In this document: piece after piece, positions 1,159 to 57,039 of the stretch
How the letters are laid out: the number at the start of each line of letters is the position of its first letter
Position numbering within the stretch: the first letter of the stretch is position 1
Sequence record: OU343168.1
Direction: 5' to 3' (one strand)
DNA length: 64,000 nucleotides
Position numbers and translations under genes: made by a program
The notes under the pieces: generated by a model
What the model was told of the DNA's origin: nothing
The model's input: only the letters and a program-made list of their open reading frames with translations
The model's database searches: none

Positions 1159-1199
1159 TGTTCTAATCTTTATTTTTTTTTCTAGAAGGGATACCACCA

Positions 1200-18577: not shown

Positions 18578-18735
18578 CCCAGGAGGGGATATCTTATACC
18601 GTTAAAGTGACCTGTTTCCACGCCATGGTTCTCTGGGTCACTGTAACGGTACAACGTTATTGATCCTCTTGGATGCGCTAACGGGTGGTGTTATGGTTAT
18701 ATCGGCGGTTACCCACCCGTTAGTCTTTTTTTTTG
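18578..18735 (+). ncRNA. candidate structured ncRNA 2 with its own terminator
   Basis: nested stems CCAGGAGG/CCTCTTGG, TACCGTTA/TAACGGTA, AGTGACC/GGTCACT; 11-bp terminator and T tract. Confidence 0.4.
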
Positions 18736-35389: not shown

Positions 35390-36088
35390 ATGAGTGACAA
35401 TCAACATCGCAAGTTTACCCCCCGTAAGAAAACCCTCCTGAATGACTGGAAACAGCCTCATCCAACGACCTTGGAACCTTTGCCGGGAGCAAAGTACCCG
35501 GCGCAGGGGATGTTCGAGTGCAAGAACAGTGGGGCGTTTCCCATTGTCTTCAAGATCAACGACGGCATCTTTGAGAAAGGTTCCAACAGTAACCACAAAG
35601 AAGTCGAACTGAACTATTCGGATCGGGGCGCGCTCTTCGAAGCGATTATTGAGGCCTCGAATGATGCGAACTTTGGGTTCCGTCAGATCCCGATTTCGAA
35701 GAAGCAGATGATCTTCTCGGGTGGGAGCGCGCGTCAATCGGAGAACCCGATTGTTCAAGCGACCTTTACCATCATCCGGGATAAGAACGGTGTGATCCAC
35801 CTGGGGTATACCAAAGGGGATTACAAAGTCCCGTTGGTATTCCGGGGTTCCAACTTCACGACGGTATACGTCAAGAATGAAGCCGGGGAGCGCGTTGAAG
35901 ACCAGGGCTTGATGTCCCGTTGGGTAGCTCGGGCCTGGGTGCGTTTCCACCAGGATCTCCTGAATGAGATCGAACAGGCAGCCTGGGAGCCTCCGAAACC
36001 GCGTGACGGTGGGGCAAACAACAACCGACAGTCTTCCAATGACTCCGGTTCGACCACCCACGATGACTTCGATGACGTGGAATTCTAA
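35390..36088 (+). CDS. probable ChmC / single-stranded nucleic-acid-binding protein
   Basis: position immediately before the gp68 homologue; disordered tail ending HDDFDDVEF. Confidence 0.55.
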   Translation: MSDNQHRKFTPRKKTLLNDWKQPHPTTLEPLPGAKYPAQGMFECKNSGAFPIVFKINDGIFEKGSNSNHKEVELNYSDRGALFEAIIEASNDANFGFRQIPISKKQMIFSGGSARQSENPIVQATFTIIRDKNGVIHLGYTKGDYKVPLVFRGSNFTTVYVKNEAGERVEDQGLMSRWVARAWVRFHQDLLNEIEQAAWEPPKPRDGGANNNRQSSNDSGSTTHDDFDDVEF

Positions 36089-36100
36089 TTAGACCAAGAA

Positions 36101-36127
36101 GGGTAGGAGGGGTTGCCCCTCCTACCC
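36101..36127 (+). terminator. rho-independent terminator-like hairpin
   Basis: GGGTAGGAGGGG / CCCCTCCTACCC. Confidence 0.7.
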
Positions 36128-36149
36128 GGTCTATTCGTTTGGTTAGAAT

Positions 36150-36167
36150 ATTTTAAACCTACATTAT
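36150..36167 (+). promoter_or_regulatory. early-type promoter motif
   Basis: ATTT-TAAACC-TACATTAT. Confidence 0.6.
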
Positions 36168-36205
36168 CTTCCCGTAATCCTGGACTATTCTGTTTGGAGT
36201 GAACC

Positions 36206-37759
36206 ATGTTTAACATCGAAGTTAAGCGGAAATCCAAGAAAACGATTAAAGCCATCATTGTTTCGTTGAATGAGAAGAGCCTCCGCTTTAACGGTGATGC
36301 AACAATCAAACTTGAACGGGTGATTAAAGAAAAGGATGCGAGTGATCCTAATCTCTTCAGTTGTTTCAACGAGTATGTAGAAAATATCTTCGATACGGAT
36401 AAGAAGATTGAACTCTTTAAGTTGTATGAAAAGGCGTATCAGATTGCTGAAAGTCCCACGTATAAGGACTACCGGGTTGAAATCGCTGAAATTAAACCGA
36501 TTATCAACGCTATTCTAAACCTCATTGATATTCCCAAGTACTGTAGTTTCATCCAGTATTCCGAACACATGGTCGTTCCTCCTGACCTGAGCGTTGCTTC
36601 TAGTAAAGGGGATTACCCGGAGCAAACGACCATTACGGATTACGACTATAAAGAGTTGGTTAAGCTGACCTTTGTGATCCGTTCGGTTTATCCGATCATC
36701 TTCTCGTTAATTGCTCGCTTCGATGCGGCAATGGGAACAGGGTACAGTGAGCAGGTGTGTGGGAGTCTGATTAAAGATAACGCCCACATCGTTAACCTGT
36801 ATGGGTGGAAGAAACTTCAGACCTATGTGAACTTTGCCTTTGGTAAACGGGGCATACCCCAGCAAGCAGACAGTATTGGGAGTGTGGAGTATTTCGTGGA
36901 GCGGGTGCTGTATGACACCCTCTTCTCCCGGCTGTGCTGTGCAGTGATCCCCGAGACCGAAGAAGGGAAACACTTGGCCACCGCCATTAACGCTTCAGTA
37001 CGTCATCATGGATCGATTGGGGGAGGGTTTAAAGCCAAGGACGCCCGGGAAGGTGAAGATGATAAGCGGTCCCTGTTGGAACGGTATCATATCAACGAAG
37101 AGATCAAGGCGGCAAATGAAACCGTAGACGCTGAGTATTTCAGTTTAGGGTTGTTCGACGAGAATGACAATGAACGGTACGTGGATCGGTTCAAGATCCC
37201 GTGTCTGGGGTTGGGTATACAGAATCCCCAGCTGGTGGAACAGGTTTACGACAACATGCCCCCGAACTGGGACATCACGTTGGATAATCACGTCATTACG
37301 TTGCTTCAGCTGACGTTCGTTGATGCGATCTCTCCTATGATCTTCTGGAGTTGTGACGGGCATCAACTACGGGCAGCCATTGCCTTGGCTCAGGTCCGTC
37401 TGAGCGAACAAGGGTATCATTACCTTCCGTCGGTACTGGGAGCGAGTAATAATCCCGGAGGCATGCGGTCCCTTTCGGATGGTTTGCGGTTGAATACTGA
37501 AGATAAAGAATTCCTGGTCAGTATTTGTGACATCCAAAGTCGTAATGACGAAGGACGGTCCTTTAATGAAGCGGTGGAGGTCGCGACGGAGTTCTTGGAA
37601 ACCTTTGGGAATGGGCAATGGAAATCGAACCTGGAATATGGGGTGTTGGATGATCCTGAAGTCTATCAACGGGTAGAACGTGCGGCCTTGTTCGACCTAG
37701 AGATTGATTTGGAAATCAAGAATGAGTTCATGCGGTTAGTTAGACAATTCAATACCTGA
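36206..37759 (+). CDS. nvRNAP sigma-like subunit (phiKZ gp68-like)
   Basis: 517 aa helical protein; synteny in the chimallivirus core block. Confidence 0.6.
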   Translation: MFNIEVKRKSKKTIKAIIVSLNEKSLRFNGDATIKLERVIKEKDASDPNLFSCFNEYVENIFDTDKKIELFKLYEKAYQIAESPTYKDYRVEIAEIKPIINAILNLIDIPKYCSFIQYSEHMVVPPDLSVASSKGDYPEQTTITDYDYKELVKLTFVIRSVYPIIFSLIARFDAAMGTGYSEQVCGSLIKDNAHIVNLYGWKKLQTYVNFAFGKRGIPQQADSIGSVEYFVERVLYDTLFSRLCCAVIPETEEGKHLATAINASVRHHGSIGGGFKAKDAREGEDDKRSLLERYHINEEIKAANETVDAEYFSLGLFDENDNERYVDRFKIPCLGLGIQNPQLVEQVYDNMPPNWDITLDNHVITLLQLTFVDAISPMIFWSCDGHQLRAAIALAQVRLSEQGYHYLPSVLGASNNPGGMRSLSDGLRLNTEDKEFLVSICDIQSRNDEGRSFNEAVEVATEFLETFGNGQWKSNLEYGVLDDPEVYQRVERAALFDLEIDLEIKNEFMRLVRQFNT

Positions 37760-37793
37760 AAGTATCATCCGTAACTAGACAGAGGAAACAAAC

Positions 37794-39230
37794 ATGTCCG
37801 AAATGTTGGTGACATTGACCCGAGCCATTTTTGGCATGGGAAATAGCAACCACGATCACGTTCATCGTCATAACCAACTCAACCTGGACAGTACTGAGGT
37901 GGATGACCTCATCATGGAACAGGTCAATGGAGGTGTCACCGCGGGTACTCTGAACCGCATTGCTGCCTCCAGCGGTAACTTGTCCCAGCGCCCTCAGGGT
38001 TACGTCTCCGTCGAAGAAGGCTTCGGTGTACGGCGGGGAATTGGACAACTCACGTTCGTTATTGAAAGCAATTCGAACTTCCATTCGGAAATGTGTGTGG
38101 TGGGGTATCTCTTTGGAGGCACTGCGACGGAACAAGGTATCTCGGATGACACCATGTTCGTTCCGGTACGGACTTGGTCAACCTTGACGACCAACACCCA
38201 TGACAGTCAAGGCTTCCCGATGACCAAGCGGATGATCGACAGTTCCCACCAGTTCCTCATGGGATCGGTGGATCAGAACAAAGACCTGAAAGCCGTACGT
38301 CCGTTGGATGTCGGGAATGAAGCCTTGGGGTTCGCCGCCAGTGAAGAAGACGGTTCTGAGATGATGTATGCCGGGACGGTGGGGAGTGACCTCAAGAACA
38401 ACACCTTGATGTCGAAGACCCTCAACCTCAATCCCACGCATTATTCCCGGGAGTTGCTTAAACTGGCGACCAATGCAGGGTTCCACTCCTCCAATGGCAG
38501 TTCGTTGGAAGTGGAACTGTCCAATGGATTGATCGGGGAATCGATTGGAGAGCTTTCTCCGCTCGAAAACCCTTTCATGCGGGCGATGATGCAATCCACC
38601 GGTCAGTACATGCTGGGTGGTTTCCAGGGGTTCAGTATTGGGGAAATCTATCAGGTTTTCGATAACCTGTTGGATGTCATGAACCTCAACCTGTTGAATC
38701 CCAGTTCCTTTGCAGAAGACAACACCTTGCTCACCAGCAGTGAATATGGCTCTGCGGGTAACCATGAGGTGATCGCTACGGAACTGGCGATGATGTCGGT
38801 TCACCTGATGTTGCAGTGCGGTCTCTCCAGCCTACGGTTCTCCGCCACCAATAACCTCATGGAATACAGCACGATCATGGATGATGGTGTGGGTGTCGCT
38901 TTCGTCATCGGTGAAGCCATGTCCATGTTGGACAATGACATGTTCGTGGAAAACCGGGTGGAAGACTTCAAGCGTCTGATTGCTCAGCACTTCTTCTCGA
39001 AATACTCGGGTCCTCATGTTCATTTGAGAACCTTGATGAATATTGAGGTGGAGTGTTACATGTTTGGTGAGATCGTTATTACGATTTCGTTCAATGGGGA
39101 AGCCAACGAGAAAACCTTCACCAACGCCACCTACTACATTAATCATACCAGCAGCAGCATTGCTGGTAATGAAAACGGCCTGTTGGAAGCCAAGAACTTC
39201 CTGACTGGTATTCGCGAATATTTCAGCTAA
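37794..39230 (+). CDS. probable PicA/Imp1 nuclear import factor (phiKZ gp69-like)
   Basis: 478 aa directly after the gp68 homologue; assignment by synteny only. Confidence 0.55.
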   Translation: MSEMLVTLTRAIFGMGNSNHDHVHRHNQLNLDSTEVDDLIMEQVNGGVTAGTLNRIAASSGNLSQRPQGYVSVEEGFGVRRGIGQLTFVIESNSNFHSEMCVVGYLFGGTATEQGISDDTMFVPVRTWSTLTTNTHDSQGFPMTKRMIDSSHQFLMGSVDQNKDLKAVRPLDVGNEALGFAASEEDGSEMMYAGTVGSDLKNNTLMSKTLNLNPTHYSRELLKLATNAGFHSSNGSSLEVELSNGLIGESIGELSPLENPFMRAMMQSTGQYMLGGFQGFSIGEIYQVFDNLLDVMNLNLLNPSSFAEDNTLLTSSEYGSAGNHEVIATELAMMSVHLMLQCGLSSLRFSATNNLMEYSTIMDDGVGVAFVIGEAMSMLDNDMFVENRVEDFKRLIAQHFFSKYSGPHVHLRTLMNIEVECYMFGEIVITISFNGEANEKTFTNATYYINHTSSSIAGNENGLLEAKNFLTGIREYFS

Positions 39231-51681: not shown

Positions 51682-52983
51682 TTATTTCAATGCCATCTCC
51701 AAGTCTAAGAGGTTCGTACGGCTGCCCGCTGTGTGGTGTGCCTTCATGCGCTGCAATAAAAATGCAGTAGGAATCAAGACCACTTCAGAGCTGAGACGAT
51801 GCCCTAAAGCCCCTAGACCTTCCCCACAACAGGTCTTACAGTAGTAACCGTCCTTTAGGGTACAGAACTGAGGGACTCTGGCTTGTACGGGTTTATTAAC
51901 GTAGCGATCCAGGTTTTCAGCGGTGAGCTGTACCAGGACTTTCCCATCCTGGATCCACGTTCCTACCCAGTATCCTTTATTGGTTGGTAGGATCGTAACG
52001 GTTTCGGTCACCGGGGTACCGCAATCCACGACATCCTCGCTAACGGCCGTACGGCCTATTAGACGCAACGTTTCCTTAACCCTAGCCCCACCTTCACCGG
52101 TGGACATAGAACGGCTGTAAGAGCCCTCTACGGCCGTATTAATGTAGTCCGCCAAGAAGTTCGGATCCCAGCCCTCTGCCAGGGAGTTAGGGAGTAGTAC
52201 CCAGCCGTCTCCTGAGGCACTGGGTTCAATACCGAAGGAAATGAACATCCGTTTACGCGAGTTGTCAATAAACTTCTTTGCAATAAAGAACTTGCGGCTA
52301 GGACCAGACATCACGATCTTCATGTCCAGCGCCACACACTGATCAATAATCGAGGTGGCAACAACCGGATCATTGAGTTCGTCTTTATGCTCTTTAAAGA
52401 GACGATCCCGGAGTTTAATGACTTCAGGACTCACCGTTAGGGCATCTACGCCACCCGGTTTAATGAAGTGAGACCCCAACCCTTCCAGGAACTGGCAGTT
52501 ATGGGAGAACTTCAAACACTGGTCTACACTGGCTTTCCCTTCAGGTACCGCTTCCCCTGGTGGTGGATTATCCACCATGAGAGTACTCAAGATCTTCAAG
52601 ATAACCGGTTTGGTGAACTCCTGGTTAAGGTAGGGTTGGGTCTTCCCGAAGCATTCCCAGAAGAGAATAACGTTGAAGAGTAAGAGTCCAAAGGTAGTCG
52701 TGACCGCTTTACCTTGCAACACGGGATGGAAGTCTCCCGGGAGTTCCAGGATTTCATCCATGTAGAACAGGGGTTCATTCACCTCCCCATTTACGGTATG
52801 GGTAGAACCCTCTACCACGACATTGAACCGGTTATCCTCCACAAAGACAGCATAGGGGTATTTCTTGAACTGTCCAGAGGAATCTTCGTCTTCAAACTGG
52901 ATCGTAATAATCGATTGAATAGCCGCCTTTTCGTTATAGGCTCGGTTATTCAGAAAGAGTTTAAGGTAGTCGAGTTTAGTCAT
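51682..52983 (-). CDS. virion RNAP beta' subunit (phiKZ gp80-like)
   Basis: DCGT...C...CKTCCG zinc site; EGSYSRSMSTGEGG bridge-helix-like; MKAHH. Confidence 0.75.
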   Translation of the reverse strand: MTKLDYLKLFLNNRAYNEKAAIQSIITIQFEDEDSSGQFKKYPYAVFVEDNRFNVVVEGSTHTVNGEVNEPLFYMDEILELPGDFHPVLQGKAVTTTFGLLLFNVILFWECFGKTQPYLNQEFTKPVILKILSTLMVDNPPPGEAVPEGKASVDQCLKFSHNCQFLEGLGSHFIKPGGVDALTVSPEVIKLRDRLFKEHKDELNDPVVATSIIDQCVALDMKIVMSGPSRKFFIAKKFIDNSRKRMFISFGIEPSASGDGWVLLPNSLAEGWDPNFLADYINTAVEGSYSRSMSTGEGGARVKETLRLIGRTAVSEDVVDCGTPVTETVTILPTNKGYWVGTWIQDGKVLVQLTAENLDRYVNKPVQARVPQFCTLKDGYYCKTCCGEGLGALGHRLSSEVVLIPTAFLLQRMKAHHTAGSRTNLLDLEMALK

Positions 52984-53879
52984 GGGAGTTCCACTCGCTG
53001 AATAAGGTCTTCAATACGGGTCAACGTCAGAGGGTCTTCAATGACCGAATAGAGGTATTGGGTCATCTTATCCTTAAGCCATTCGTTATTGATTTCAGAC
53101 ACCAGGAAGAACCCAATAACCTCCTTGGCATACTGAAGGGTACTGTCTTCCGTTTGTTGAGCCAGGAGAACTTCCAAGTTACGACTGTAGAAACTCAGGA
53201 AGCTCTTTACACTCCCTCCCAGTTGTCCGTTCTTCTTAACGTGTTCAAAGGCCAGAGTTCCTTCAATAAGGGTTGCATTCGCCCGAATACGCTGTTCAAT
53301 AGGGGTGGGAACGTTCTCAATCTCCTCGGGGTTAAAGAGAGCGTCCTTAATGGCTTTAAGGGTGACTTCTGAAACATCCTCAATAAAGGTTTCGTACTCT
53401 GACAGATCGAGGTCTTCACCCAGGTAGAGTTGCATCACCAGGAACAGTCGGTTCACAGGGGGGATGTCATACGCCTCCAAGACGTGTTTAAGACCAATCA
53501 GGTCTTCGTACTCCTGCAACTCCATAAAGAACGACAACAACCGAGTTAAAGCAGGGAGGTTGTCTTCACCCAGGAAATCGTGATTGAAAACGAACCCTAG
53601 CTGTTCCAGCACATCGATTATATTGGTCGTTAGGATCAAATACACCTGATGCTTCTTAGCCGGGATATCCAAGGCTTCATTAATTAACAGATCAGTCAGT
53701 TGACTGGGCATCAAGGACTCAGGTTGACTGAGCATAATTAAATTAAACGATTCGTCCAATTCTTTAGCCTGATTGGCGGGTATGGCGTTCCGGAGTTCTG
53801 ACCAGAGACCCCCTACCAGGGTGTCAGCCAGGTACGCTCCCTCTTCCAGGGTAACAGATTCTTCATGCTCAATAATCAT
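52980..53879 (-). CDS. conserved hypothetical protein, probably virion-associated
   Basis: start reassigned to MIIEHEE; stop overlaps the RNAP subunit start. Confidence 0.65.
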   Translation of the reverse strand: MIIEHEESVTLEEGAYLADTLVGGLWSELRNAIPANQAKELDESFNLIMLSQPESLMPSQLTDLLINEALDIPAKKHQVYLILTTNIIDVLEQLGFVFNHDFLGEDNLPALTRLLSFFMELQEYEDLIGLKHVLEAYDIPPVNRLFLVMQLYLGEDLDLSEYETFIEDVSEVTLKAIKDALFNPEEIENVPTPIEQRIRANATLIEGTLAFEHVKKNGQLGGSVKSFLSFYSRNLEVLLAQQTEDSTLQYAKEVIGFFLVSEINNEWLKDKMTQYLYSVIEDPLTLTRIEDLIQRVELP

Positions 53880-53924
53880 TGGGTTAACTCTCGTAAAGTG
53901 CGTTTCCAAAGGGAATCATAGCAT

Positions 53925-54794
53925 ATGTCGACTAAACAGCAACAGCGTCGGGTTAAGAAACTCAATAAGCGCAAGCAAGTGAGTAAGCAAAAACAACGGG
54001 CTAAGAACATCCAGGAAGCTCACCTCCGACAGGACTTTGGTAAAGGCTACCAGGGGGAGGCCCTGAGTAAGGATGCCTTGTACGATAAGGTCAGGGGTGA
54101 AAACAAAGCCTTCTCGGTACGCGACCTTATTAATAACCGTCAACGTCTGGCTGAGCTGGCTGAACAGATGAAGCTGACGGGTGATGAGGACATCCCTCAG
54201 CTCTTCAGTGGGGAAGAACTCCTCAACGCCATCAATGACATGATTACCGTCACCATTAAGCTCCACAGTGGGGTGATCGTGTACAACCGTCTGGTCGAAG
54301 AACGCCGTTTCGACATCAGTGAGGACGACCGTACCCTACTGGAGAACTACGAACGCAAAGTGGTGGAGTTTGCGGAAGATGTCTCAGTTGTTACGACCCT
54401 GCATGAAGCGGGCCAACAACCTGAGGATTACTTTGAAGTCGTCCTTAACCTGGCCGATGTCATGGCAGCGCTCAGCGAGGAGTTTGGGGAACCGGTTCTG
54501 GCTCTCATTACCCAACAGGGTGATCTGGTCGACGCCTATGCCGTTGAGCACAAACCTGAGGGACTGTCTATCTACGGTTACATGAACCAACTTCACAGTG
54601 AACGTATTACGGTTATCCAACAGCTGTACGGTGAGAGCCGGCTGAATGACGTCTTTAACGAATTGCACACCCTGGAGCAGGAACTCCCAGATTCCCCTGA
54701 AGAGATCCCGGGTGATAACCTCCCCTTCCCTGAGAAGGAAGAAGTTGGCGAATTCATCGCTATTTCCAACGATCCTGTCATTAACCCCCAGTAA
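53925..54794 (+). CDS. hypothetical protein with Lys/Gln/Arg-rich N-terminus
   Basis: clean ORF, 289 aa. Confidence 0.75.
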   Translation: MSTKQQQRRVKKLNKRKQVSKQKQRAKNIQEAHLRQDFGKGYQGEALSKDALYDKVRGENKAFSVRDLINNRQRLAELAEQMKLTGDEDIPQLFSGEELLNAINDMITVTIKLHSGVIVYNRLVEERRFDISEDDRTLLENYERKVVEFAEDVSVVTTLHEAGQQPEDYFEVVLNLADVMAALSEEFGEPVLALITQQGDLVDAYAVEHKPEGLSIYGYMNQLHSERITVIQQLYGESRLNDVFNELHTLEQELPDSPEEIPGDNLPFPEKEEVGEFIAISNDPVINPQ

Positions 54795-54806: not shown

Positions 54807-56531
54807 ATGTCTGAGAATGTAACCCCGAACGAAAACCCTGAACTGACTCCCCCTTCGGAGTTGAGCAAAGCTGTTGAACAAACGATTCCCAAAACGGAGC
54901 CTTCCAGCCACTTTGGCTTCATGGATACCCACACGCCTCAGAATACACCCATGAAGGAGGTGGTGGAACCGCTCAACCCCATTACCAAAGAACTGGTTGA
55001 AGACGATCGAGCTAAGGGGTTCACCAGTATCTTCCTGGGGGTTGGTAAAGAAGAGAATGAGAAAGCGGCTGAACTGATTACCAACTGGAGTGCGTGGAAC
55101 ACGTTCAAAGAATTGAATAAGGTAGGGGAGGTTTCCCCAACGGTCTTTGCATCAGCTAAGCAAGACTGGGATGCCTTTGTTCAAGAGAACTACCCGGATG
55201 TGAATCCCAATGAGTTGGAGAAGACCGCTAGTGATCTGTTCAAGTTCATGAACAGTCTTCAGGAGAACCTCCAACTTCGTACCCGCATGGTGCGGGAAGA
55301 GAATATTACCAACGCCTCGCGCCGGTGTGATAAACTCACCACGACCGATATCGTGGGTAAAACCCCGTCGGTGAATAAGAAAGGGTTGAGTATTGCAGAT
55401 CGCATGATTCGCTCGACCATTCGTTCGTCGGGGGGTGTATACCAGTATAACCAACTGCTGCGTAATTCGTTCCTGAGTATTACGTGGGAACGTCCTCAGA
55501 AGCTGGAAGTCGCCGATCTCATCAACAACATTAACCGCCGTATTCGGGGGTATGTACGACGGGTCGGTGGGAACGCCATGGCGTTGTCTTACATTGCGGG
55601 GTATATTGAGATCTGGGATTGGTTGAAGCCCCGCTTGGTCAGCAGCAGTGTCAAAGGCCTGGCGGATTTCGATGACCTCAGCAAGGTGATCCGTATTACG
55701 GACATGCCGGTGATCTGTGCAGGTCTCTTGGCGTCGATCACGGATGACGGCGTCCAAATGGACCTCCGCTGCATGAACCCCAGCTGTGACTGGTATCAGT
55801 TCGATCTCATCGATCCGACTAAGTTGGTGCAGCGCCGTCCGTCGATTGAGACCGATGAAGAAGCCGCTTTCTTTGGTAATATCTTCAGTGGGCGTGAACA
55901 ACACACCGTCGATGAAATCCTCAAGATGATCGAACAGTCCACCTACGGGATGGACAATCAGTACGTGTACAACGAGGATCAATCCATTCGTCTGAAAGTA
56001 GGACCTCCCAGTCTGTCAGATGCCTTCGCTACCTTCGACTATTTCGTAGGGCGGGTGGATAAGCAGTTGGCGGATATTAACAACAAGGTCAACACGGAAC
56101 AAGACCTGGAAGAGCAACGTCTCCTTCTGCTTAACAGCTTGAGTGGTGCGGAGTACATGCACTGGGTGGAAGAGTTCGCTATTATGCCACCTCCGGGTGA
56201 AGACAGTGAACCCCAGATCATTAAGCGGGCCAAGGAAGACCCTAACGAGTTCAATAAAGGTCTTATGGACTCCCTGCTGACCGATGAGGTGATGAATAAG
56301 AACTTGGTGTTGTTCGTCTACAATAAGGCGCCTTATCTAACCCGGACTTTTATTGGCGTCCGTAACTTCGTGTGTCCGAAGTGCGGTACGGAGTCGGATG
56401 CTCACCAAGAGGATCGTAAACTCGGGTATACGCCGATCGATGCCTTTATGAGTTTTTTTATCCATTCCCAGCTGATGTTGATGAATCTGGCGATGGAGCG
56501 TCAAAAGGTAAACAACGAAGCCCTCTCCTGA
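54807..56531 (+). CDS. putative tail/baseplate assembly chaperone (T4 gp26-like C-terminal region)
   Basis: CMNPSC and CPKC Cys motifs; ends with the slippery site ATG AGT TTT TTT ATC. Confidence 0.5.
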   Translation: MSENVTPNENPELTPPSELSKAVEQTIPKTEPSSHFGFMDTHTPQNTPMKEVVEPLNPITKELVEDDRAKGFTSIFLGVGKEENEKAAELITNWSAWNTFKELNKVGEVSPTVFASAKQDWDAFVQENYPDVNPNELEKTASDLFKFMNSLQENLQLRTRMVREENITNASRRCDKLTTTDIVGKTPSVNKKGLSIADRMIRSTIRSSGGVYQYNQLLRNSFLSITWERPQKLEVADLINNINRRIRGYVRRVGGNAMALSYIAGYIEIWDWLKPRLVSSSVKGLADFDDLSKVIRITDMPVICAGLLASITDDGVQMDLRCMNPSCDWYQFDLIDPTKLVQRRPSIETDEEAAFFGNIFSGREQHTVDEILKMIEQSTYGMDNQYVYNEDQSIRLKVGPPSLSDAFATFDYFVGRVDKQLADINNKVNTEQDLEEQRLLLLNSLSGAEYMHWVEEFAIMPPPGEDSEPQIIKRAKEDPNEFNKGLMDSLLTDEVMNKNLVLFVYNKAPYLTRTFIGVRNFVCPKCGTESDAHQEDRKLGYTPIDAFMSFFIHSQLMLMNLAMERQKVNNEALS

Positions 56532-57001
56532 TTGGCGGTAAAGCGATTCACAATCCGGAGTTCTCGGCGGTTTACTTAAACCTCCAGAAGCAAGATCTCA
56601 GTGGTCTCAAGGAAGAGACTATCCTGTTGAACAACCAAGCGTTGCATGACATCAACATGGGATATGTCTCACCCCGTAATCTCCCCCCTCACCAATCGAT
56701 TAAGTTCTTTCCGTCTGAAACCCGGTATTACCACCCCTTCTCGTATGAGAGTATAGGAGAGTATTACGGGACTTTTCGGCTGGATGAATACCTGCCCTTA
56801 AAGGATTACCTGGAATTGCCCGCTAACTGTGCAGACACGTTGGTTAAGGCCGTTCAAAAGGGACGGGAAAAACGGTTGGCAATGGAGAAAGAACATCTGA
56901 AGGAAGAGGAAGAGAAACAGGCGAAGAGTGGGGGTAAACGAACCGCCTCGGAGTCGGTTTCTATGGATGCATTACTGGATCAATTGTCTAAACTTCGTTA
57001 A
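56453..57001 (+). CDS. -1 frame extension (gpGT/E'-like); the 56627 ORF of the track is its 3' part
   Basis: -1 frame is open from 56420 to 57001 with no ATG before the slippery site or in the following ~190 nt. Confidence 0.55.
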   Translation, partial: FFYPFPADVDESGDGASKGKQRSPLLIGGKAIHNPEFSAVYLNLQKQDLSGLKEETILLNNQALHDINMGYVSPRNLPPHQSIKFFPSETRYYHPFSYESIGEYYGTFRLDEYLPLKDYLELPANCADTLVKAVQKGREKRLAMEKEHLKEEEEKQAKSGGKRTASESVSMDALLDQLSKLR

Positions 57002-57010
57002 GAGAATAGG

Positions 57011-57039
57011 TAACCTGGGGGCTCTAAGCCCCCAGGTTA
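57011..57039 (+). terminator. rho-independent terminator-like hairpin
   Basis: TAACCTGGGGG / CCCCCAGGTTA. Confidence 0.7.

What the first reader, a model, noticed from the sequence alone, without database searches (positions are those of the whole stretch)
56420..57001. Unannotated programmed -1 frameshift producing a gpG/gpGT-like pair
Seen: near the end of the 574-aa ORF the frame reads ATG AGT TTT TTT ATC, a T TTT TTT heptamer at 56453-59. The -1 frame is open from 56420 to 57001 and reads FYPFPADVDESGDG...LPLKDYLELPANC..., with no ATG or RBS that explains its first ~60 codons. A TCCAT-CCAG/CTGG-ATGGA hairpin follows. Slippage would give about 731 aa. Established: lambda G/GT and P2 E/E' (T-run) tail chaperones use this mechanism. 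I do not know of a report for phiKZ-like jumbo phages, and no tape-measure gene is adjacent.
Basis: partly seen in the sequence, partly recalled or inferred. Interest (0 to 1): 0.75.

Follow-up and report, generated by a model that had tools for sequence, protein, structure and literature searches.

The report
Conserved frameshift in jumbo-phage core gene
Near the end of a core gene of unknown function in phiKZ/EL-type giant phages, a run of T's that is kept in every relative examined very probably makes some ribosomes slip back one base, so that the gene yields a short and a long protein, which current genome annotations miss.

Summary
The window is Pseudomonas phage phiRU, an EL-like jumbo phage. 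T TTT TTT sits in phase at 56453-59 of the 574-codon ORF (EL gp47). The -1 frame is open from 56420 to 57001, and its first ATG/GTG/TTG is at 56627.

Comparative evidence for recoding is strong. In 42 relatives (phiKZ gp77, Goslar gp081, RAY gp267, SPN3US, PCH45, OBP, vibriophages, metagenome contigs; down to about 15% protein identity), the same position carries a slippery motif:
- T TTT TT(T/C/A) in 37 loci.
- In-phase G GGT TT(T/C) in two loci.
- A T5-T6 run in three loci.

Each is followed by a start-less -1 ORF of 149-190 codons in all but one truncated contig. No fused homologue appears among 1.84 billion proteins. The stretch before any start codon shows coding-type substitution in the -1 frame (pN/pS 0.48, against 1.1-1.4 in the other frames).

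Membership in the gpG/GT tail-chaperone family is not supported: the context, size and family matches are all wrong. There is only a weak structural likeness to T4 gp51-type baseplate-hub assembly proteins. I found no published report.

Verdict: a real, unannotated, family-wide programmed -1 frameshift whose function is unresolved.

The parts
54807..56531 (+). Frame-0 ORF, 574 codons plus stop. It corresponds to EL gp47, phiKZ gp77, Goslar gp081, RAY gp267 and Chimalliviridae core gene cg18 (phrog_4585). It has four invariant Cys. The last 23 residues after the slip site belong to a predicted C-terminal helix.
   Evidence: phrog_4585, E 4.5e-158; AF2 pLDDT 78.7; helix 546-573; phiKZ gp77; cg18.
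56453..56459 (+). Slippery heptamer T TTT TTT in X XXY YYZ phase (codons AGT TTT TTT). This is a recoding signal in an intact gene, not a break.
   Evidence: The same alignment position carries T TTT TT(T/C/A) in 37 of 37 loci and G GGT TT(T/C) or a T5-T6 run in the 5 members without Phe-Phe.
56459..57001 (+). The part of the -1 frame read after the slip: 180 codons plus stop. The first ~43 residues are a poorly conserved, predicted-disordered linker. A conserved domain of about 100 residues and a charged helical tail follow. The annotated EL gp48 (56627..57001) is only its C-terminal two thirds.
   Evidence: tblastn matches start at residue 1 in distant phages; P2, P4, L23 invariant in 25/25; coding signature before any start; hhalign 92%, E 6e-7, between clades.
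56532..56626 (+). The 'gap' between the frame-0 stop and the first ATG/GTG/TTG of the -1 frame. It is annotated as intergenic, but in relatives it evolves as coding sequence in the -1 frame.
   Evidence: pN/pS 0.48 in the -1 frame against 1.10 and 1.40 at the other offsets.
56461..56497 (+). It is present in the MFE fold but is not significant and not conserved. It is probably not a stimulator.
   Evidence: z -0.5; 0 consensus pairs among 8 relatives.
57011..57039 (.). A 13-bp G+C-rich hairpin directly after the stop of the -1 ORF. It probably marks the end of the transcription unit. No such element lies between the frame-0 stop and the -1 ORF body.
   Evidence: sequence.
51682..54794 (.). Conserved upstream neighbours: a virion RNA polymerase subunit (51682..52983, minus; EL gp44 / phiKZ gp80), EL gp45 / phiKZ gp79 (52980..53909, minus) and EL gp46 / the phiKZ gp78 position (53925..54794, plus).
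   Evidence: the same order in phiKZ, Goslar, RAY, JM-2012 and MJ359.

Best explanation
This is a programmed -1 ribosomal frameshift in a core gene of phiKZ/EL-type jumbo phages.

Mechanism. Ribosomes translating the 574-codon ORF reach U UUU UUU with tRNA-Phe in both the P and A sites. Most stay in frame and terminate 23 codons further on. This gives a protein of about 64 kDa that ends in an alpha-helix. A fraction slips back one base, where both tRNAs can re-pair with UUU. These ribosomes read 180 further codons in the -1 frame and give a protein of about 731 residues (about 81 kDa). In the long form the terminal helix is replaced by a flexible linker, a conserved domain of about 100 residues and a charged helical tail. 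The annotated small gene downstream (EL gp48; the last 80 codons in phiKZ, '76.4') is the C-terminal part of this long isoform, not a separate gene.

Shown here:
- the signal and its phase;
- their conservation;
- the start-less -1 ORF;
- the coding signature in the -1 frame;
- the absence of fused homologues.

Inferred:
- that slippage is ribosomal rather than transcriptional;
- that both isoforms are needed (frame-0 pN/pS in the overlap is 0.54);
- the efficiency, which is unknown.

Function, with low confidence (about 0.3): a non-virion assembly factor for the baseplate hub or tail. This rests on a weak fold likeness to T4 gp51-type proteins and on the protein's absence from the modelled Goslar virion.
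For: (1): the in-phase heptamer, and a -1 frame open across it with no start codon for 56 codons.

(2): in Erwinia, Shewanella, Klebsiella, Aeromonas and Vibrio phages, OBP and others (24-57% protein identity), similarity in the -1 frame begins at the first codon after the heptamer. The frame-0 stop follows 23-26 codons later.

(3): the superfamily extends to phiKZ gp77, Goslar, RAY, SPN3US, PCH45, JM-2012 and distant metagenome contigs. All have the heptamer and a -1 ORF of 149-173 codons.

(4), on 37 loci:
- The heptamers are T7 in 22, T6C in 14 and T6A in 1.
- The first site codon is TTT in 37/37, although Phe is TTC in 75% of cases elsewhere in the same genes (583 against 191).
- The preceding codon takes 9 different forms (9 different amino acids) but always ends in T, against a background of 36%.

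(5): the five members lacking Phe-Phe still carry a motif there. Two have in-phase G GGT TTT or G GGT TTC, with no homopolymer run, so transcriptional slippage is unlikely for them. Three have a T5-T6 run that gives a U_UUU tetramer. All five have the -1 ORF.

(6): in the stretch between the frame-0 stop and the first possible start, pN/pS is 0.48 in the -1 frame and 1.10 and 1.40 at the other offsets.

(7): Pro2, Pro4 and Leu23 of the -1 product are invariant in 25/25 sequences. These residues lie where no independent initiation is possible.

(8): none of 153 homologues from 1.84 billion representatives is extended by about 170 residues. The two-frame arrangement is therefore never resolved into a single ORF.

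(9) (PMC4066793): H_HH.U_UU.Y heptamers are among the most efficient -1 motifs in E. coli, and U_UU.C and U_UU.U are the best tetramers after A_AA.G.

(10): the -1-encoded domain is homologous between clades (hhalign 92%, E 6e-7).
Against: - There is no direct evidence for the product: no peptide, footprint or immunoblot data were available.
- No stimulatory element was found. There is no upstream SD-like sequence, and the downstream folds are no better than shuffles and are not conserved. Efficiency could therefore be low.
- An SD-like sequence and a TTG at 56627 could allow some independent initiation of the annotated gp48.
- RAY-type phages have a start codon upstream of the site in the -1 frame.
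- T7-T8 runs could also support RNA-polymerase slippage, which would give the same protein.
- The dN/dS alignments were built on the -1 translation, which slightly favours that frame.
Confidence: 0.8

Rival explanations
1. Transcriptional slippage. The phage or host RNA polymerase adds one extra U while copying the T run. A fraction of mRNAs then carries the long ORF in a single frame, and the protein products are the same as under ribosomal slippage.
For: Runs of 7-8 T occur in 25 of 37 loci. UUUUUUU is under-represented in genes, partly because of slippage (PMC4066793). These phages transcribe with their own unusual multisubunit polymerases.
Against: Twelve of 37 loci have only six T's. Two family members have G GGT TTT or G GGT TTC, with runs of only 3-4 T's, yet keep the X XXY YYZ phase and the -1 ORF. 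The phase of the motif relative to frame 0 is kept throughout. The T at the wobble position of the variable preceding codon fits tandem tRNA re-pairing.
Confidence: 0.12
2. Two separate genes, as annotated. Under this reading the 574-aa protein and a 124-aa protein are initiated independently, the second at the TTG at 56627, and the open -1 frame upstream of that start is incidental.
For: There is an SD-like AAGGAAGAG 9-12 nt before the TTG. GenBank records annotate it this way. Relatives do have some start codon 83-260 nt after the site.
Against: The positions of those starts are not conserved. The -1 frame upstream of them evolves as coding sequence. Homology in the -1 frame starts at the heptamer, with invariant Pro2, Pro4 and Leu23. 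In 13 of the 37 loci the -1 frame opens only 7 or 13 nt before the heptamer, which leaves no room for an initiation codon.
Confidence: 0.05
3. A sequencing or assembly error in a homopolymer, or a recently inactivated gene. Under this reading the true gene is a single ORF of about 731 codons.
For: Homopolymer runs are error-prone. One EL-like record (HHBS8_1) does carry a frameshift-type break elsewhere in this gene.
Against: The same T7 and frame relation occur in 10 independently sequenced EL-like genomes and in more than 40 divergent lineages. No single-ORF homologue exists among 153 family representatives. The frame-0 tail after the site is itself under constraint (pN/pS 0.54).
Confidence: 0.01

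Closest known systems
Lambda gpG/gpGT and P2 gpE/gpE+E' tail assembly chaperones (conserved -1 frameshift in tail genes; Xu, Hendrix & Duda 2004, as cited in PMC5009743)
   Same: [quoted passage not shown] Two isoforms share the N-terminal body and differ in a C-terminal domain encoded in the -1 frame. The arrangement is conserved although the sequences have diverged. Like G and GT, the protein was not among those modelled in a relative's virion (Goslar).
   Different: The upstream ORF has 470-670 codons, not about 100-150. The gene is not between tail-tube and tape-measure genes; it lies next to virion-RNA-polymerase and DNA-polymerase genes. No tail-assembly-chaperone family matches; in BFVD, a 'tail assembly chaperone' entry scores only E 1.9.
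T4 gp51-type baseplate hub assembly catalyst/chaperone (Pfam PF12322, T4_baseplate)
   Same: The only named structural neighbours of the AF2 model are of this type:
- 'Baseplate hub assembly protein, T4-like': E 1.1e-3, TM 0.48 on the target.
- 'Baseplate hub assembly chaperone', phage ACP17: E 0.04.
- 'T4 gp51-like', phage CP21: E 2.5 (all).
Two GenBank records label homologues 'baseplate hub' or 'putative baseplate protein'.
   Different: Sequence support is below threshold: PF12322 matches 2 of 41 members with a best E of 0.37. The T4-type proteins have about 250-285 residues, against 574 here. I know of no frameshift in T4 gene 51 (own knowledge, not tested). The gene neighbourhood here is not a hub cluster.
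Bacterial IS3-family transposase orfA/orfAB and other X_XX.Z_ZZ.N -1 frameshift genes (Sharma et al. 2014, PMC4066793)
   Same: The motif class is the same. U_UU.U_UU.C is used by some IS elements, and H_HH.U_UU.Y heptamers are efficient in E. coli. The long fusion product is made by tandem slippage.
   Different: Those cases usually have a downstream pseudoknot or hairpin, or an upstream SD-like stimulator. None is detectable or conserved here.
phrog_4585 / phrog_8054, Chimalliviridae core gene cg18 (phiKZ gp77, Goslar gp081, RAY gp267)
   Same: The window's ORF is a full-length member (E 4.5e-158) with conserved synteny. Prichard et al. 2023 list it as a core 'hypothetical protein' that is not specific to nucleus-forming phages.
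   Different: Nothing differs. This is the family to which the gene belongs. The frameshift and the long isoform are not part of its current description.

Membership tests
Programmed -1 ribosomal frameshift site (tandem slippage) | X XXY YYZ heptamer in phase with the upstream frame | tested here: met
   T TTT TTT at 56453-59. In phase in 37/37 loci. G GGT TTY in phase in two members without Phe-Phe.
Programmed -1 ribosomal frameshift site (tandem slippage) | The -1 ORF is open across the site and lacks its own initiation codon near its 5' end | tested here: met
   The first ATG/GTG/TTG is 173 nt after the Phe codon in the window and 83-260 nt after it in relatives. The RAY type is the only exception.
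Programmed -1 ribosomal frameshift site (tandem slippage) | The motif and frame relation are conserved in diverged relatives, beyond what the amino acids require | tested here: met
   The site codon is TTT in 37/37 against a background of 25%. The preceding wobble base is T in 37/37 across nine different codons, against a background of 36%. One locus has T6A where frame 0 reads Phe-Leu.
Programmed -1 ribosomal frameshift site (tandem slippage) | Protein-coding constraint in the -1 frame upstream of any start | tested here: met
   pN/pS is 0.48 in the -1 frame against 1.10 and 1.40 at the other offsets. P2, P4 and L23 are invariant.
Programmed -1 ribosomal frameshift site (tandem slippage) | A stimulatory element (downstream structure or upstream SD-like sequence). 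This is common but not obligatory. | tested here: not met
   The window hairpin has z -0.5. Eight relatives have z between -0.8 and +0.9. RNAalifold finds 0 consensus pairs.
Programmed -1 ribosomal frameshift site (tandem slippage) | The trans-frame protein is actually made | not testable with these tools
   No proteomic or ribosome-profiling data were at hand.
gpG/gpGT-type tail assembly chaperone pair | Location between the major tail/tube gene and the tape-measure gene | tested here: not met
   The neighbours are a virion RNAP subunit, gp45, gp46, gp49, gp50 and DNA polymerase. The same synteny holds in phiKZ, Goslar and RAY.
gpG/gpGT-type tail assembly chaperone pair | A small upstream ORF (about 100-150 codons), and a sequence or fold match to tail-assembly-chaperone families | tested here: not met
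   The ORF has 574 codons. There is no chaperone family in Pfam or PHROGs. A BFVD 'tail assembly chaperone' entry scores E 1.9.
gpG/gpGT-type tail assembly chaperone pair | A frameshift near the 3' end that gives an extended isoform | tested here: met
gpG/gpGT-type tail assembly chaperone pair | Binding to the tape measure and tube proteins, and absence from virions | not testable with these tools
   There is only indirect evidence. The Goslar virion model of 28 proteins does not mention gp81 in its main text.
T4 gp51-like baseplate hub assembly protein (PF12322) | A match to the family model above its threshold | tested here: not met
   PF12322 matches 2 of 41 members, with a best E of 0.37. 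It does not match the window protein at E<=1.
T4 gp51-like baseplate hub assembly protein (PF12322) | Fold similarity | tested here: inconclusive
   Foldseek against BFVD gives E 1.1e-3 to 2.5, with TM 0.48 on the target and 0.25-0.28 on the query. There is nothing in the PDB.
phrog_4585 / Chimalliviridae cg18 (phiKZ gp77 family) | A full-length profile match and conserved synteny | tested here: met
   E 4.5e-158, covering profile positions 14-550 of 551. Also.

The most novel reading that the evidence does not exclude
The gp77/cg18 pair may be the long-missing counterpart, in jumbo phages and perhaps T4-type phages, of the frameshift-coupled G/GT tail-assembly chaperone. On this reading a gp51-like hub-assembly body (the short form) and the same body carrying an extra -1-encoded adaptor domain (the long form) are made in a fixed ratio. 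A slippage-set stoichiometry would then be a near-universal principle of long-tail assembly, and one of the function-less core genes of nucleus-forming phages would get a role.
Probability: 0.2. Interest if true: 0.85.

Novelty: new member of a known kind. Interest (0 to 1): 0.7.

Why it matters
phiKZ-type and EL-type jumbo phages are intensively studied, for the phage nucleus and for therapy against Pseudomonas. About half of their core genes have no known function. This result matters in four ways:
- It adds an unrecognised protein of about 81 kDa to the proteome of every member examined.
- It shows that a 'small hypothetical gene' and an 'intergenic gap' in dozens of GenBank records are really the tail of a trans-frame isoform.
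- It gives a concrete, checkable handle on core gene cg18 (phiKZ gp77).
- For the recoding field, it is a deeply conserved -1 site on U UUU UUY with no detectable stimulator, and natural G GGU UUY substitutions mark it as ribosomal.

Tried and rejected
- A conserved downstream hairpin or pseudoknot was rejected.
- Sequencing error or pseudogene was rejected on distribution.
- The 'ZipA-like cell division protein' label on homologues has no Pfam or NCBIfam support.
- My guess that the gene might be the PicA/Imp1 importer (phiKZ gp69) was wrong. tblastn and synteny place it at phiKZ gp77, and PicA is cg12.
- Searches of the PDB by fold and by profile gave nothing beyond zinc-finger-like noise around the CPxC motif.
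- PHROGs and NCBIfam gave no named family.
- The structure of the -1 piece was too poor (pLDDT 50.7) to justify a fold search, so none was run.
- A search for relatives of the -1 piece in the 5.8-billion-protein set found only 6 short annotated ORFs.
- The 'gp77' in the Goslar virion paper is Goslar's own gp77, a capsid decorator, and not the phiKZ gp77 homologue.
I resent the alignment without those rows.
Full report
**Identity of the window**

The region 54807-57001 is 100% identical to Pseudomonas phage vB_PaeM_phiRU. It is 98.3-98.8% identical to phage EL and seven other EL-like genomes. In EL the 574-codon ORF is gp47, and the small ORF annotated downstream (TTG start) is gp48. Both are labelled 'hypothetical protein'.

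**The observation**

One search shows ATG AGT TTT TTT ATC in the frame of ORF 54807..56531. Seven T's lie at 56453-59, in X XXY YYZ phase. The -1 frame runs open from 56420 (after a TAA at 56417-19) to the TAA at 56999-57001. Its first ATG, GTG or TTG is the TTG at 56627.

- It begins one base after the heptamer.
- Its energy is ordinary (z -0.5).
- Relatives do not share it, and RNAalifold finds no consensus pair.

T>=7 runs are scarce in the window (7 overlapping matches at 3 places, against 14.9 expected). The two others are intergenic.

**Relatives within the EL / OBP / vibriophage clade**

tblastn with each frame's piece, queried separately, shows three things in Erwinia RisingSun and Joad, Shewanella FishSpeaker, Klebsiella Miami, Aeromonas D3 and others. 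The -1 piece matches from its very first residue. It overlaps the end of the upstream gene. It always lies in the -1 frame.

I located the codon aligned to Phe550 in 20 and then 12 further loci. Every one has T TTT TTN there, a frame-0 stop 23-26 codons later, and a -1 frame open for 160-190 codons. No start codon occurs for 83-203 nt. One locus (Kosakonia Kc263) has T TTT TTA, where frame 0 reads Phe-Leu. The T run is therefore kept even where the amino acid changes.

**Extension to the whole superfamily**

A profile search of 1.84 billion representative proteins found 153 homologues. They are 455-668 residues long, apart from a few fragments. In each, the match to the end of the profile lies within about 50 residues of the C-terminus. 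No homologue has the two parts in one frame.

Nearly all end with a CPxC motif, then a conserved Pro-x-Asp stretch, then Phe-Phe, then 10-46 more residues. They fall in phrog_4585 and phrog_8054.

tblastn with two distant members identified the named relatives:
- phiKZ gp77
- PhiPA3 gp074
- Goslar gp081
- RAY gp267
- SPN3US (36054..38024)
- PCH45
- Halocynthia phage JM-2012
- Klebsiella MJ359 (annotated 'baseplate hub')

The gene order is the same as in EL: virion RNAP subunit, gp79, gp78, gp77, then the small ORF. All seven fetched genomes and four distant metagenome contigs have T TTT TT(T/C), followed by a -1 ORF of 149-173 codons.

Prichard et al. 2023 list this gene as core gene cg18, 'hypothetical protein', not specific to nucleus-forming phages.

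**Statistics on the signal** (37 loci)

- The heptamers are T7 in 22, T6C in 14 and T6A in 1.
- The T runs have 6 bases in 12 loci, 7 in 22 and 8 in 3.
- Elsewhere in the same genes Phe is TTC 583 times and TTT 191 times. The first site codon is nevertheless TTT in 37 of 37.
- The codon before it takes nine different forms, coding for nine amino acids. All nine end in T, against a background of 36% T.

**A falsification attempt**

I fetched five family members whose proteins lack Phe-Phe at this place. None has lost the arrangement.
- Two carry in-phase G GGT TTT or G GGT TTC. This is a different heptamer of the same class with no homopolymer run. It argues for tandem tRNA slippage and against polymerase slippage.
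- Three carry a T5 or T6 run in another phase, which gives a U_UUU tetramer.
- Four have the long, start-less -1 ORF. In the fifth the contig ends 66 codons into it.

Sharma et al. 2014 rank H_HH.U_UU.Y heptamers among the most efficient -1 motifs in E. coli. They rank U_UU.C and U_UU.U as the best tetramers after A_AA.G.

**Coding signature**

| Region | -1 frame pN/pS | Other reading offsets |
|---|---|---|
| Frame-0 stop to first possible start ('gap') | 0.48 | 1.10, 1.40 |
| After the first start | 0.40 | 1.11, 1.43 |
| Overlap with frame 0 | 0.97 | 0.54 (frame 0), 1.01 |

These are Nei-Gojobori counts over pairs within six clades. The gap behaves like the region after the first start, so it is coding in the -1 frame. 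In the overlap, frame 0 is the constrained one. This fits a selected C-terminal helix in the short form and a loose linker in the long form.

Even so, Pro2, Pro4 and Leu23 of the -1 product are invariant in 25 of 25 sequences. One caveat applies: the alignments were made on the -1 translation.

**Structure and function**

The AF2 model of the 574-residue form is good (pLDDT 78.7, pTM 0.75). Residues 546-573 form a terminal helix, so the slip at 550/551 swaps this helix for the extension.

The model has no neighbour in the PDB. In BFVD it first finds jumbo-phage homologues. It then finds, weakly, proteins named baseplate hub assembly protein or chaperone of the T4 gp51 type (E 1.1e-3, 0.04 and 2.5). 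PF12322 appears in 2 of 41 members, but only at E 0.37 or worse. I take this as a lead and not as membership.

The -1 piece gave a poor model (pLDDT 50.7), with its first ~43 residues disordered and a long helix near the end. Its domain is homologous between the EL clade and the phiKZ / Goslar / RAY / SPN3US clade (hhalign 92%, E 6e-7).

The main text of the Goslar virion paper, which models 28 proteins, does not mention gp81. This would fit a non-virion assembly factor, but it does not prove one.

**Mechanism and rivals**

The best reading is a ribosomal -1 slip with tRNA-Phe in both sites, giving about 64-kDa and about 81-kDa isoforms. The rivals fare as follows:
- Transcriptional slippage gives the same proteins and cannot be excluded for the T7-T8 phages. 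It fits the T6 and G GGT TTY lineages poorly.
- Independent initiation at 56627 may add some free gp48. It cannot explain the conserved coding upstream of that start.
- Sequencing error is excluded by the distribution across lineages.

**Comparison with known systems**

In logic the site resembles lambda G/GT and P2 E/E+E'. It fails the membership features that could be tested: position, size and family match.

In mechanism it belongs with X_XX.Z_ZZ.N sites, but no stimulator is detectable. One observation is unexplained. Among 8 phages with 30-57% protein identity, 15 of the 16 nucleotide columns after the heptamer are at least 70% conserved. This may reflect dual coding, or it may be an RNA-level signal.

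**Novelty**

Six full-text searches combining frameshift terms with phiKZ, SPN3US, jumbo phage, Chimalliviridae or tail assembly chaperone returned nothing on this gene. The large 2016 recoding review mentions neither phiKZ nor jumbo phages. Subscription-only papers were not searchable. GenBank records annotate two genes, a truncated second gene, or none.

No sequence joining the two frames was built, printed or searched. Each frame was always handled separately, and the junction peptide quoted in the finding was not used or repeated. I treat the heptamer as a recoding signal in an intact gene, so its coordinates are given.

Breaks in other records are only counted. There is one frameshift-type break in this gene in the HHBS8_1 record. 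The gene in the vB_PQ1 record is matched in several pieces.

One slip must be declared. The motifs cited here come from the paper read.

Noticed in passing
window 56532-57001; L001-L003, L037, L039: GenBank annotation of the downstream ORF is inconsistent between near-identical and related phages. EL starts it at a TTG. HHBS8_1 starts it later. The IR-QUMS-PaBa1 record has no CDS there. RAY gp266 is called as an ORF that overlaps the upstream gene by 136 nt. phiKZ '76.4' covers only the last 80 codons.
   Followed up: yes
L002 (PQ287644, HHBS8_1); PQ516283 (vB_PQ1): In HHBS8_1 the gp47 homologue is annotated in two pieces. It has one frameshift-type break relative to the nine other EL-like genomes. 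This may be a homopolymer sequencing error. In the 184-kb vB_PQ1 record the gene is matched in several pieces and places.
   Followed up: partly
window 56460-56475 and the equivalent positions in L004-L006, L008-L010 and L014: Fifteen of the 16 nucleotide columns directly 3' of the heptamer are at least 70% conserved, and 10 are invariant, among phages with 30-57% protein identity. No conserved RNA pairing is found. The cause could be dual coding or an unrecognised RNA-level stimulator.
   Followed up: partly
window 1173-1181 and 18726-18734: These are the only other T>=7 runs in the 64-kb window, each of nine T's. Both are intergenic, so they may be terminator or promoter-region tracts. T7 and A7 runs are rarer than in shuffled sequence.
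   Followed up: partly
window 57011-57039: A 13-bp G+C-rich inverted repeat lies directly after the stop of the -1 ORF and before the next gene (57044). It looks like a terminator. The scan reported it on the minus strand.
   Followed up: no
window 54807-56531 (residues C322, C327, C523, C526): Four Cys are invariant, or nearly so, across the whole superfamily, which suggests a zinc site. The second pair (CPxC) lies 24 residues before the shift site. It produces only spurious zinc-finger hits in Pfam and the PDB.
   Followed up: partly
L004, L026, L032 (RisingSun, ZPAH34, LAh10) and the KPN8 and MJ359 records: Homologues carry conflicting labels: 'putative ZipA-like cell division protein', 'putative baseplate protein' and 'baseplate hub'. 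The ZipA label has no support in Pfam or NCBIfam scans. The baseplate labels agree with the weak gp51-type fold hits.
   Followed up: partly
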